A program made the position numbers and the translations under genes. Under the pieces are notes generated by a model that did no database searches, had not been told where the DNA came from, and was given only the letters and a program-made list of their open reading frames with translations. A DNA stretch of 63,435 nt, the filler included, from Octopus bimaculoides (Eukaryota): assembly GCF_001194135.2 (NCBI RefSeq). It is 4 parts of 3 records of this genome, joined end to end, with 100 filler letters (N's around TTAATTAATTAA, not from the genome) between each part and the next. Parts side by side here need not be neighbours in the genome. Positions count along the whole stretch, not along the records: positions 1 to 20,661 come from NC_068994.1; 3 more parts are not named here. One strand, 5' to 3'. The first letter of the stretch is position 1. Each line of letters starts with the position of its first letter. Positions 13,398 through 13,637 of this stretch are shown piece by piece.

Positions 13398-13637
13398 GCA
13401 AAATAAAGAGAAGCAATGATTACCAAAAAATCAGCAACAGTGTGAAAAATCCAAATATTATGTTCAGGACTTGGAATCATTGGTATTGTGAAAATTTATG
13501 TTCTTGGAGTCTGAACTGCTGTGGTTATTTTTATAAGTATGGCGGGTGTCAATTACTTATCATGAATGATTGTTACAACTCGCCAAAAGTCCTCCTTTCC
13601 GATGGAAACTTTATTGATCTACGTACACCCATAAAAT
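13398..13637 (+). CDS. PAN/apple-like domain exon C (phase 1-1, 240 nt), paralog of exon A
   Basis: ttattgtag acceptor, gtaagc donor. KIKRSNDYQKISNSVKNPNIMFRTWNHWYCENLCSWSLNCCGYFYKYGGCQLLIMNDCYNSPKVLLSDGNFIDLRTPIK. The upstream intron is also homologous to 1770-1973. Confidence 0.8.

What the first reader, a model, noticed from the sequence alone, without database searches (positions are those of the whole stretch)
13398..13637. PAN exons A and C show an extreme excess of amino-acid-changing substitutions
Seen, by hand alignment of 1974-2210 with 13398-13637: of 78 aligned codons, 50 are identical, 27 change the amino acid and 1 (GAC/GAT) is silent only. There is one in-frame 3-nt insertion and no stops or frameshifts. 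Changes cluster next to the cysteines (VWRQMS vs TWNHWY; FSSS vs SWSL; SDW vs YGG) while the Cys core is fixed. Inference: diversifying selection after recent duplication, as in ligand/receptor arms races. Multi-hit codons may hide a few silent changes.
Basis: partly seen in the sequence, partly recalled or inferred. Interest (0 to 1): 0.75.

Follow-up and report, generated by a model that had tools for sequence, protein, structure and literature searches.

The report
Fast-evolving octopus PAN-domain exons
Two related exons in an Octopus bimaculoides gene cluster do differ almost only by amino-acid-changing substitutions, but they are old subtypes of an uncharacterised octopus surface-protein family whose PAN/apple-like domains evolve under diversifying selection, not a recent duplicate pair.

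Summary
The counts are exact: 78 aligned codons, 50 identical, 27 replacement, 1 silent, one in-frame 3-nt indel, no stops. "Extreme" is overstated for this pair. dN/dS is 1.6 (NG86, Fisher p=0.30) to 3.3-3.7 (ML, p about 0.03). dN (0.24) matches other cross-subtype pairs; dS (0.07) is unusually low. The exon (p=0.17) is less diverged than its upstream intron (0.22-0.24).

The window is Octopus bimaculoides. A, B and C are phase 1-1 exons of an octopus-restricted family: [B-type PAN exon][A-type PAN exon]n plus one exon with a Ser/Thr stalk, a transmembrane helix and a conserved tail.

With paralogues and orthologues from O. bimaculoides, O. sinensis and O. vulgaris, A groups with an "alpha" subtype and C with a "gamma" subtype. 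These split before the species diverged, so the duplication is not recent. The Cys core is not fully fixed: one Cys swaps position (Y41C/C59Y).

Family-wide site models support positive selection. Overall omega is about 1, about 20% of sites have omega about 4.4, and M1a/M2a p=0.0016, robust to tree and data changes. The conserved tail serves as a negative control (omega 0.30).

Exon A is unannotated, absent at the syntenic site in O. sinensis, and loses homology 15 nt past its donor. It may be a relic.

The parts
1974..2210 (+). Exon A: A-type PAN/apple-like domain exon, alpha subtype, 237 nt, phase 1-1. It is intact but is not part of any protein model.
   Evidence: Frame and splice sites. 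Alpha-subtype grouping with D_bim and alpha_sin. No protein in the database contains it.
1337..1973 (+). Intron upstream of exon A, homologous to the introns upstream of the other A-type exons. It is CT-rich and ends in a polypyrimidine tract plus AG.
   Evidence: blastn to L001 14110-14754, L002 11926-12572 and L004. p=0.17-0.18 to D and 0.19 to alpha_sin.
2211..2225 (+). Donor site and the first 15 nt of the intron (GTAAGCGGTTAGTTT). Homology of copy A to every other copy ends here.
   Evidence: identical to copy C over 15 nt, then unrelated sequence. All the other copies stay alignable for at least 250 nt.
3773..9127 (+). Interval between A and B. It is orthologous to the O. sinensis intergenic region between LOC118765932 and the first B exon of LOC118765931. 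It holds microsatellites, TE debris and three small assembly gaps.
   Evidence: Syntenic blastn blocks at 84-91% identity. p=0.085 over 2159 nt.
10735..10983 (+). Exon B: B-type PAN/apple-like domain exon, 249 nt, phase 1-1. It is spliced to exon C in UniProt model A0A0L8FY39.
   Evidence: Sub-threshold Pfam PAN_1 hit.
12216..13193 (.). Assembly gap (978 N) inside the B-C intron. It hides the true upstream extent of copy C.
13194..13397 (+). Intron upstream of exon C, homologous to 1780-1973. It contains a (CTTT)n expansion.
   Evidence: p=0.22-0.24 to copy A; p=0.20 to O. sinensis g1.
13398..13637 (+). Exon C: A-type PAN/apple-like domain exon, gamma subtype, 240 nt, phase 1-1.
   Evidence: (part of P0002). 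The AlphaFold2 model was built on this exon.
13638..14026 (+). Intron downstream of exon C, homologous to the downstream introns of D, alpha_sin, g1, g2 and delta, but not of A.

Best explanation
The window is part of an Octopus bimaculoides cluster of genes for single-pass surface proteins. These are built from alternating B-type and A-type PAN/apple-like domain exons (all phase 1-1). One terminal exon follows, encoding a Ser/Thr-rich stalk, a juxtamembrane helix, a transmembrane helix and a short conserved tail.

Exons A and C are not a young duplicate pair. They belong to two subtypes, alpha and gamma, that separated before O. bimaculoides and O. sinensis/vulgaris diverged.

Across the family the PAN-like exons evolve with an average omega near 1. 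That average combines a constrained scaffold with roughly one fifth of codons under recurrent positive (diversifying) selection. The scaffold comprises five invariant Cys, a sixth Cys that relocates between subtypes, and conserved aromatic, Gly and Leu positions. The selected codons lie mainly in the strand-to-helix loop before the first Cys, at the end of the helix, and at the hairpin turn.

The near-absence of silent differences between A and C has three contributing causes:
- this long-term replacement-biased divergence (shown);
- a dS that is low by sampling on about 41 synonymous sites (shown to be an outlier, cause inferred);
- possibly relaxed constraint on exon A, an orphan copy whose native 3' intron is lost (inferred).

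By analogy with other PAN/apple modules, the likely role is extracellular recognition of a protein or glycan ligand that itself changes quickly, such as a pathogen, gamete or self/non-self marker. This function is inferred and not tested.
For: Organism and gene models:
- P0002 is O. bimaculoides A0A0L8FY39 and equals exon B plus exon C. P0036 is LOC106880439, named 'Apple domain-containing protein'.
- The O. sinensis models LOC118765931/2 show B-A-B-A-stalk-TM architecture.
- Exon maps and conserved splice sites in four loci.

Subtypes and tree:
- A is 79/74% identical in protein to D/alpha_sin but 65% to C. C is 75-78% identical to g1/g2.
- The ML tree (A,(D,al)) beats the alternatives by about 9 lnL units.

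Selection:
- A-type exons: M0 omega 1.02. M1a-M2a LRT 12.9 (p=0.0016). M7-M8 LRT 13.7 (p=0.0011). M8a-M8 LRT 13.0 (p=0.0003). About 21% of sites have omega about 4.4. Top sites are codons 13, 23, 24, 26, 29, 36 and 49.
- The result is robust to an alternative tree, to dropping delta, to dropping gap columns and to dropping exon A (LRT 10.6-14.0).
- 32 null simulations under M1a gave a maximum LRT of 5.84.
- B-type exons: LRT 29.
- Tail exon control: omega 0.30, significantly below 1, with no positive class.
- The orthologous exon pair D/alpha_sin is more diverged (p=0.108) than 1326 nt of flanking intron (0.073), Fisher p=0.068. Its dN of 0.134 compares with intron K of about 0.08.

PAN/apple assignment:
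- Sub-threshold Pfam PAN_1/2/3 hits.
- The top four PDB profile hits are all apicomplexan PAN/apple microneme proteins, with four Cys aligned.
- The AF2 model has pLDDT 74 and strand-helix-hairpin order. The best Foldseek hit is the PAN/apple lectin SML-2.
Against: - For the A/C pair alone the excess is only borderline: NG86 Fisher p=0.30, ML p about 0.03. No branch test is significant.
- With the upstream intron as the neutral yardstick, dN does not exceed neutral for A/C.
- The codon models were my own implementation on 79 codons and 6-7 sequences.
- Paralogue gene conversion is suggested by three sites shared by all O. bimaculoides copies and by discordant intron and exon distances. It can inflate site-model tests, as can multi-nucleotide mutations.
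- Exon A has no transcript or protein support. It carries private changes at otherwise invariant positions: K10R, V15M, S35F, S61F, loss of L65, and the junction base T->C.
- All PAN assignments are below formal significance thresholds.
Confidence: 0.62

Rival explanations
1. Exon A is a non-functional relic: an orphan partial duplicate of an alpha-type exon stranded between two genes. Under this reading, much of the replacement excess in the A/C comparison is unconstrained decay of A added to ordinary subtype divergence, not adaptive change in this pair.
For: - No protein in 5.8 billion clusters contains exon A.
- Homology to every other copy stops 15 nt after its donor.
- No counterpart lies at the syntenic position in O. 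sinensis.
- Five of its six private substitutions are replacements at positions invariant in the other six copies. It also has a codon deletion and a changed junction base.
- The A tip omega is 2.2 and is not distinguishable from 1.
Against: - The open frame, the AG acceptor with its polypyrimidine tract, the GTAAGC donor and all six alpha-type Cys are intact.
- The exon is less diverged from D (p=0.114) than its own intron is (0.17-0.18), which suggests past or present constraint.
- Only about 10 substitutions fall on its branch, so survival of the frame is weak evidence either way.
- The family-wide selection signal persists when A is removed.
Confidence: 0.4
2. There is no positive selection. 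The PAN-like exons evolve nearly neutrally (relaxed constraint, omega about 1). On this view the site-model signal is an artefact of gene conversion among paralogues, multi-nucleotide mutations, misalignment and small sample size.
For: - M0 omega is 1.0 and is not different from 1.
- Signs of paralogue exchange: species-specific shared states at codons 12, 13 and 46. The introns around B/C are twice as diverged from the syntenic O. sinensis unit (0.17-0.21) as neighbouring intergenic DNA (0.085).
- 9 of the 28 changed codons in the A/C pair carry 2-3 differences.
- The NG86 test is not significant.
Against: - Seven copies carry no stop. All five indels are in frame. Every splice site is kept over a tree length of about 2.1 substitutions per codon. 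By extrapolation, the chance of that under neutrality is of order 1e-3 (inference).
- There is strong rate heterogeneity, with a class at omega of about 0.07-0.13 (M0 versus M2a LRT 27).
- The LRT is stable under four perturbations and under a deliberately wrong tree, and lies beyond all 32 null simulations.
- The same code gives omega 0.30 for the tail exon.
Confidence: 0.17
3. One reading: A and C arose by a recent duplication within this gene and then diverged in a burst of diversifying selection.
For: - The two copies have the same phase and near-identical length, with conserved splice sites and about 190 nt of alignable upstream intron.
- Pairwise ML omega is 3.3-3.7.
- dS between A and C is the lowest of all alpha-gamma pairs (0.069).
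Against: - Each copy has closer relatives in another gene or another species.
- Upstream intron divergence between A and C (K2P 0.26-0.33) is 3-4 times the bimaculoides-sinensis neutral divergence (0.085).
- Twelve nucleotide sites are fixed between the alpha and gamma subtypes across species.
- A genuinely recent duplication in this family looks quite different: O. sinensis g1/g2 have 97% nucleotide identity.
Confidence: 0.04
4. A and C are mutually exclusive alternative exons, diversified so that one gene can produce receptor isoforms.
For: - Same phase (1-1) and nearly the same length (237 and 240 nt). They are homologous and lie on the same strand.
Against: - A different exon type (B) lies between them.
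- The O. sinensis RefSeq models use two A-type exons in tandem within one protein (P0001/P0038).
- A lies upstream of DNA that is intergenic in O. sinensis.
Confidence: 0.03

Closest known systems
PAN/apple domain superfamily (Pfam PAN_1 PF00024, PAN_2 PF08276, PAN_3 PF08277). Solved examples include Eimeria MIC5 (1hky), Toxoplasma MIC4 apple domains (2ll3, 4a5v) and the Sarcocystis lectin SML-2 (2yil).
   Same: The module is about 80 residues and disulfide-rich. The predicted order is strand, helix, then beta-hairpin. The Cys spacing C-x3-C-x5-C-x9/11-C aligns with the PAN core of MIC5. The only Pfam and PDB hits are PAN/apple proteins. The context is extracellular.
   Different: All matches are below curated or significance thresholds (Pfam 15-18 bits against cut-offs of about 21; PDB E=0.026-0.9; Foldseek E=1.3). 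The family has six Cys, with one Cys that changes position between subtypes. Two alternating sub-types are each encoded by a single phase 1-1 exon.
Lineage-specific, tandemly duplicated extracellular recognition families under diversifying selection. Examples from my own knowledge, not tested here: abalone lysin/VERL, snail FREPs, sea-urchin SpTransformer (185/333), and vertebrate MHC peptide-binding exons.
   Same: There are clustered paralogues with exon-level duplication. A conserved scaffold carries a minority of sites with omega well above 1. The membrane anchor and tail are conserved. There are hints of paralogue exchange.
   Different: No ligand, tissue or function is known. There is no population data. 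The evidence is codon models on 6-7 sequences only. The domain type (PAN/apple-like) differs from those families.
Molluscan C-type-lectin plus PAN-like repeat proteins, e.g. Physella acuta 'macrophage mannose receptor 1-like' XP_059165951.1
   Same: This is the nearest relative outside Octopus in a scan of 1.84 billion representatives (E=4.5e-21 over five repeats). It shares the motif C-x3-C-x5-C-x-GY-x-Y-x3-C-x-L.
   Different: In that protein the PAN-like module is short and paired with C-type lectin domains. It has no B/A alternation and no homologous stalk, TM or tail exon. Similarity is confined to about 35 residues.
Class 1-1 symmetric module exons (exon shuffling of extracellular domains; established knowledge)
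   Same: Every A-type and B-type exon starts and ends in phase 1 and encodes exactly one domain. Units can therefore be duplicated or deleted without breaking the frame. The O. sinensis 4.66-kb [B-gamma] tandem duplication is an example.
   Different: Nothing unusual. This is the textbook pattern.

Membership tests
PAN/apple domain (Pfam clan PAN; PROSITE PAN/Apple) | Significant match to a curated PAN-family profile | tested here: inconclusive
   Exon A hits PAN_2 at E=0.014, 15.9 bits, against a cut-off of 21.1. B-type domains hit PAN_1 at E=0.002-0.02 and PAN_3 at E=0.018. Exon C alone has no hit. UniRef names paralogue P0036 'Apple domain-containing protein'; that is the source's own label and was not re-tested.
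PAN/apple domain (Pfam clan PAN; PROSITE PAN/Apple) | Conserved cysteine core linking the helix to the sheet | tested here: met
   Five Cys columns are invariant in 13 domains. Four of them align with the Cys of the Eimeria MIC5 apple domain in the profile alignment. Disulfide connectivity itself was not determined.
PAN/apple domain (Pfam clan PAN; PROSITE PAN/Apple) | Fold: a central alpha-helix packed on an antiparallel beta-sheet | tested here: inconclusive
   The AF2 model has pLDDT 73.9 and pTM 0.63, with elements E22-26, H31-37, E41-47, E50-55, E64-67 and E72-74. The best Foldseek hit is the PAN/apple lectin SML-2 (2yil), but at E=1.3, probability 0.47 and TM 0.45.
Sequence under positive (diversifying) selection | dN/dS significantly above 1 for the pair named in the finding | tested here: inconclusive
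   NG86 omega 1.58, Fisher p=0.30. ML omega 3.3-3.7, LRT p=0.03. Neutral simulation p=0.008 for at most 1 silent codon. Branch tests on the A-C path give p=0.16.
Sequence under positive (diversifying) selection | A class of sites with omega above 1 in a phylogenetic site model, with a control | tested here: met
   M1a/M2a p=0.0016, M7/M8 p=0.0011, M8a/M8 p=0.0003. Robustness runs give p=0.0009-0.005. In the bootstrap, 0 of 32 replicates reached 5.99. The tail exon control has omega 0.30 and no positive class. This is my own implementation; recombination is not modelled.
Sequence under positive (diversifying) selection | Replacement divergence exceeds neutral (intron) divergence | tested here: inconclusive
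   A/C: dN 0.24 against upstream intron K2P 0.26-0.33, so not met. D/alpha_sin orthologues: dN 0.134 against intron 0.08; exon p 0.108 against 0.073, Fisher p=0.068. Alpha-gamma pairs: dN 0.24-0.28 against downstream intron 0.17-0.23.
Recent tandem exon duplicates | The two copies are each other's closest relatives, and their neutral divergence is below the between-species divergence | tested here: not met
   A groups with D_bim/alpha_sin and C with g1/g2_sin. A/C intron divergence of 0.22-0.24 is far above the interspecies neutral value of 0.085.
Pseudo-exon / dead duplicate (applies to exon A) | Disabling lesions: a stop, a frameshift, or lost splice sites | tested here: not met
   The frame is open, the indel is in frame, and AG and GTAAGC are intact. 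With only about 10 substitutions on its branch this is weak evidence of function.
Pseudo-exon / dead duplicate (applies to exon A) | Absence from mature transcripts | not testable with these tools
   No RNA-seq is available here. No protein model contains it, and it is absent from the syntenic site in O. sinensis.
Mutually exclusive alternative exons | Homologous same-phase exons that never co-occur in one transcript | tested here: not met
   The O. sinensis RefSeq models P0001/P0038 contain two A-type exons in series with B-type exons between them.

The most novel reading that the evidence does not exclude
The cluster may be a cephalopod recognition locus for allorecognition, gamete recognition or pathogen recognition. 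On this reading, diversity is maintained by positive or balancing selection together with exchange of whole [B][A] exon units between paralogues. It would explain several observations. The B-C unit and its introns are about twice as diverged from the syntenic O. sinensis unit (p=0.17-0.21; 0.38-0.44 in the first half of exon B) as the adjoining intergenic DNA (0.085). One disulfide cysteine has relocated between subtypes. An orphan alpha-type exon sits upstream of the gamma-type gene, where it could serve as a donor or reserve cassette.
Probability: 0.15. Interest if true: 0.7.

Novelty: new member of a known kind. Interest (0 to 1): 0.4.

Why it matters
If the family-level result holds, this is an unnamed, apparently Octopus-restricted family of surface proteins. 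Its ligand-facing PAN/apple-like domains diversify quickly while the membrane anchor stays conserved. That is the signature of a molecule engaged in recognition of a changing partner. Very few such systems are described in cephalopods. I found no paper that mentions these loci.

It offers concrete candidate sites (codons 13, 23, 24, 26, 29, 36 and 49 of the A-type exon) and a testable architecture.

For the scan itself the lesson is methodological. A raw count of 27 replacement codons to 1 silent codon on 78 codons is only borderline evidence. It compared two old subtypes, one of which may be a dead copy.

Tried and rejected
- Word-indexed protein search with exon A alone found nothing, not even a self model.
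- Contig look-ups for P0001, P0002 and P0040 failed. I therefore could not retrieve the gap-free chromosome-level sequence of this very locus or the O. vulgaris cluster. The tail exon of the window's gene, and any exon upstream of A, were not found in the window.
- Foldseek against the PDB gave no significant match. Only the ranking (PAN/apple lectin first) is suggestive.
- Clustering of changes near cysteines is not significant.
- Two-ratio and free-ratio branch models found no branch significantly different from the rest, and none significantly above 1. I therefore reject a selection burst specific to A or C.
- Gene conversion between A and C as the cause of the low dS has little support: only one site is shared exclusively by A and C, and three sites are shared by all O. 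bimaculoides copies.
- Biopython's YN00 failed on this pair.
- Literature searches for PAN/apple domains in cephalopods and for the locus identifiers returned nothing relevant.
- I considered the Ser/Thr/Ala/Asn-rich ORF 2316-2801, just after exon A, as a possible stalk exon. I judged it most likely trinucleotide-repeat low complexity (weak MGC-24 hit at E=0.044) and did not pursue it.
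Full report
**What is at the coordinates**

The piece is draft eukaryotic DNA: 37.6% G+C, six runs of N, many microsatellites and transposon fragments. Segments 1780-2225 and 13197-13652 are a direct repeat at 79% identity.

The frame that is open in both copies starts two bases into each exon. Each exon is bounded by an AG acceptor after a polypyrimidine tract and by a GTAAGC donor. Exon A is 1974-2210 (237 nt) and exon C is 13398-13637 (240 nt). Both are phase 1-1. A third, more distant homologue is exon B at 10735-10983, also phase 1-1, lying between them.

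**Checking the observation**

The hand count is exactly right. There are 78 aligned codons: 50 identical, 27 replacement and 1 silent-only. There are 38 nucleotide differences, one 3-nt indel, and no stop or frameshift.

How unusual this is depends on the test.
- Nei-Gojobori path counting assigns 4.7 synonymous changes to 41 synonymous sites and 33.3 replacements to 193 sites. That gives omega 1.58 and a one-sided Fisher p of 0.30.
- Pairwise GY94 maximum likelihood gives omega 3.3-3.7 with an LRT of 4.5-4.7 (p about 0.03) under three codon-frequency models. This agrees with Biopython's ML estimate of 3.30.
- Differences fall 10/21/7 on codon positions 1/2/3 (chi-square p=0.014).
- In neutral mutation simulations conditioned on no stop, only 0.8% of runs have at most 1 silent-only codon.
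- Survival of the open frame is weak evidence. About 20% of neutral runs with 38 substitutions create no stop.

Two details in the finding are wrong or unsupported.
- The cysteines are not all fixed. Codon 41 is Tyr in A and Cys in C, and codon 59 is Cys in A and Tyr in C.
- Clustering of changes beside cysteines is not significant (p=0.19-0.31).

The upstream intron copies differ at p=0.22-0.24 (K2P 0.26-0.29), whereas the exons differ at p=0.169 (K2P 0.19). So dN (0.20-0.24) does not exceed intron divergence, and dS (0.07-0.12) lies well below it.

**What the exons belong to**

A profile of A, B and C against 1.84 billion representative proteins found only five strong hits.
- One is UniProt A0A0L8FY39 of Octopus bimaculoides. 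It is exactly exon B spliced to exon C with read-through into the intron. This identifies the organism.
- The others are O. sinensis LOC118765931 (isoforms of 411 and 458 aa), an O. vulgaris protein, and an unnamed assembly product.
- A second search added O. bimaculoides LOC106880439 ('Apple domain-containing protein') and O. sinensis LOC118765932.

The full-length models show the architecture. B-type and A-type domains alternate. They are followed by a Ser/Thr-rich stalk, a conserved juxtamembrane segment, one transmembrane helix and a 25-residue tail. The O. vulgaris model starts with a signal peptide.

I fetched genomic DNA for three loci and mapped every exon.
- Each domain is one phase 1-1 exon.
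- All seven A-type exons share the intron motifs ...CTGTTTTCTAATCTTTATTGCAG| and |GTAAGCGGTTAGTTTTATGTT.
- The stalk, TM helix and tail are encoded by a single terminal exon. That exon is not present in the window.

**PAN/apple identity**

The evidence is convergent, but every item is sub-threshold.
- Pfam PAN_1/2/3 hits at E=0.002-0.02, below the gathering scores.
- A 13-domain profile hits four PAN/apple microneme proteins as the top four PDB sequences (E=0.026-0.89), with four cysteines aligned.
- An AlphaFold2 model of exon C (pLDDT 74) has strand-helix-hairpin order. Its best Foldseek match is the PAN/apple lectin SML-2, at a non-significant E=1.3.

I therefore call the modules PAN/apple-like.

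The nearest relative outside Octopus is a Physella acuta 'macrophage mannose receptor 1-like' protein with C-type lectin plus PAN-like repeats.

**A and C are old subtypes, not recent duplicates**

In the seven-exon codon alignment:
- A is 79% and 74% identical in protein to exon D of LOC106880439 and to its O. sinensis orthologue, but only 65% to C.
- C is 75-78% identical to the two O. sinensis LOC118765931 exons.

Maximum likelihood prefers (A,(D,alpha_sin)),(C,(g1,g2)),delta by about 9 log-likelihood units. Twelve nucleotide sites are fixed between the alpha and gamma groups across species.

The neutral divergence between the two species at this locus is p=0.085 (2159 nt of syntenic intergenic DNA) and 0.05-0.08 in the introns around D. 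The A/C intron divergence is three to four times that.

A truly recent duplication in this family looks different. The O. sinensis g1/g2 pair is 97% identical, with nearly identical introns.

With outgroups, the 3-nt indel is a codon loss in A. The Tyr/Cys swap is a subtype character: alpha has Cys59, while gamma and delta have Cys41. Both subtypes keep six cysteines, which suggests a relocated disulfide partner (inference).

**Selection in the family**

I wrote a GY94/F3x4 codon-likelihood program. It reproduces Biopython's pairwise estimate.

For the seven A-type exons:
- M0 gives omega 1.02, and the models with site classes fit much better.
- M1a versus M2a: LRT 12.9 (p=0.0016).
- M7 versus M8: LRT 13.7 (p=0.0011).
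- M8a versus M8: LRT 13.0 (p=0.0003).
- About 20% of codons are at omega about 0.07, about 60% at 1, and about 21% at about 4.4.

The highest posteriors are at codons 13, 23, 24, 26, 29, 36 and 49. In the model these are the end of the first strand, the loop before the first Cys, the end of the helix, and the hairpin turn.

The LRT stays at 10.6-14.0 with another topology, without the long delta branch, without gap columns and without exon A. In 32 data sets simulated under M1a the largest LRT was 5.84.

The six B-type exons give omega 0.79 and an LRT of 29. The conserved part of the tail exon gives omega 0.30, significantly below 1, with no positive class. The method therefore does not call selection everywhere.

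Independent of dS, the orthologous exon pair D/alpha_sin is more diverged (26/240) than 1326 nt of flanking intron (97/1326), Fisher p=0.068. Alpha-gamma dN (0.24-0.28) is at or above downstream-intron divergence (0.17-0.23).

Pure neutrality is unlikely. Seven copies keep the frame, all indels are in frame, and every splice site is kept over about 165 inferred substitutions. Extrapolating, the chance of that is of order 1e-3 (inference).

**Why the A/C ratio looks so extreme**

In the table of all pairs, dN for A/C (0.238) is typical of alpha-gamma pairs (0.235-0.283). Its dS (0.069) is the lowest of these pairs (0.135-0.29). Branch models give omega 2.2 for the A tip, 2.5 for the C tip and 2.1 for the whole A-to-C path. 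None is significantly above 1.

The striking 27:1 count therefore has three parts:
- a family-wide replacement bias;
- a small, noisy synonymous denominator;
- possibly relaxed constraint on A.

I found little sign that A/C gene conversion lowered dS.

**Status of exon A**

Synteny shows that window 3773-9127 corresponds to the O. sinensis intergenic region between the tail exon of LOC118765932 and the first B exon of LOC118765931. The window's B-C unit corresponds to the O. sinensis B-g1 unit.

Exon A lies upstream of that interval, and O. sinensis has no counterpart there. Its homology with every other copy ends 15 nt after the donor. It is in no protein model. It carries private replacements at positions invariant in the other six copies, and a changed junction base.

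On the other hand, it is intact and less diverged from D than its intron is. If spliced to B it would read through in frame, matching the A-type-to-B-type junctions used in O. sinensis. I cannot decide between a live upstream exon and a relic without transcript data.

**Comparison with what is known, and verdict**

This is the familiar pattern of a lineage-specific, tandemly duplicated family of extracellular recognition modules, with a conserved scaffold and anchor and positively selected surface positions. It is built from class 1-1 module exons. What is new is the family itself. It appears confined to Octopus in the databases searched, and it is not mentioned in the literature I could search.

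The inference of diversifying selection is supported for the family but not specifically for this pair, and the 'recent duplication' premise is wrong.

Caveats are the short alignment, the few taxa, my own implementation, unmodelled recombination and multi-nucleotide changes, the sub-threshold domain assignment, and the absence of expression data.

Noticed in passing
window 9127-14026 versus L002 43319-46150; window 4227-5967 and 7900-8368 versus L002 28056-29766 and 38016-38484: Divergence from the syntenic O. sinensis sequence is p=0.085 in the intergenic blocks. It rises to 0.17-0.21 in the introns flanking exons B and C. So the B-C unit is older than the species split, or it was replaced by a paralogous unit.
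   Followed up: partly
window 10735-10983 (exon B), especially 10750-10899: The first half of exon B differs from the syntenic O. sinensis B exon at p=0.38-0.44, against 0.12-0.26 in the flanking introns. Protein identity is only about 51%. Exon B resembles the B exon of the neighbouring gene (LOC106880439 locus) more closely, at 64%. B-type exons give the strongest site-model signal (LRT 29).
   Followed up: partly
window 2211-2225 and 2226-2810: Copy A loses homology with all other copies 15 nt past its donor. What follows is a trinucleotide-repeat-like stretch with a 162-codon Ser/Thr/Ala/Asn-rich ORF (2316-2801). That ORF has a weak sialomucin (MGC-24) hit at E=0.044. It is probably low complexity, but a stalk-like exon was not excluded.
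   Followed up: no
A-type exon codons 41 and 59 (window 2096-2098/2150-2152 in A; 13520-13522/13574-13576 in C): There is a reciprocal Cys/Tyr exchange between subtypes. Alpha copies have Tyr41/Cys59, and gamma and delta copies have Cys41/Tyr59 (Trp59 in delta). The total stays at six Cys, which suggests a relocated disulfide.
   Followed up: partly
window 13457-13465 and 13577-13585 (exon C): Exon C has lost the N-x-T sequon conserved in all the other A-type and B-type exons (NIT -> NIM). It has NSP where the alpha copies have NST.
   Followed up: no
L002 44887-50425 (O. sinensis): The [B-type exon + gamma exon] unit is tandemly duplicated with a 4.66-kb period. The exons are 97% identical, and copy g1 has a 9-nt in-frame deletion. 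This is a genuinely recent unit duplication in the same family.
   Followed up: partly
L001 9782-10027 (O. bimaculoides LOC106880439 locus): The RefSeq model P0036 starts at an internal Met (MVRQ...) at the very end of an intact B-type exon. That exon is otherwise left out, so the annotated protein is probably N-terminally truncated.
   Followed up: no
window 53-611, 7013-8330, 17408-17962, 19480-20254; repeats 17980-18250 / 18869-19149 (inverted) / 20404-20595: Transposon debris. There are two related non-LTR retrotransposon tails with zf-RVT-like ORFs, and degenerate ORFs at 7013-8330 that look like a reverse-transcriptase fragment by eye (no Pfam hit). There is an LTR-element gag zinc knuckle plus an aspartyl protease, and three copies of a roughly 200-270-bp SINE-like repeat. 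All Pfam hits are below threshold.
   Followed up: partly
window 3683-3752, 6921-6930, 9021-9030, 12216-13193, 18388-18686: Assembly gaps. The 978-N gap sits in the B-C intron, directly upstream of the region compared in the finding. The extent of the A/C intron homology is therefore unknown.
   Followed up: no
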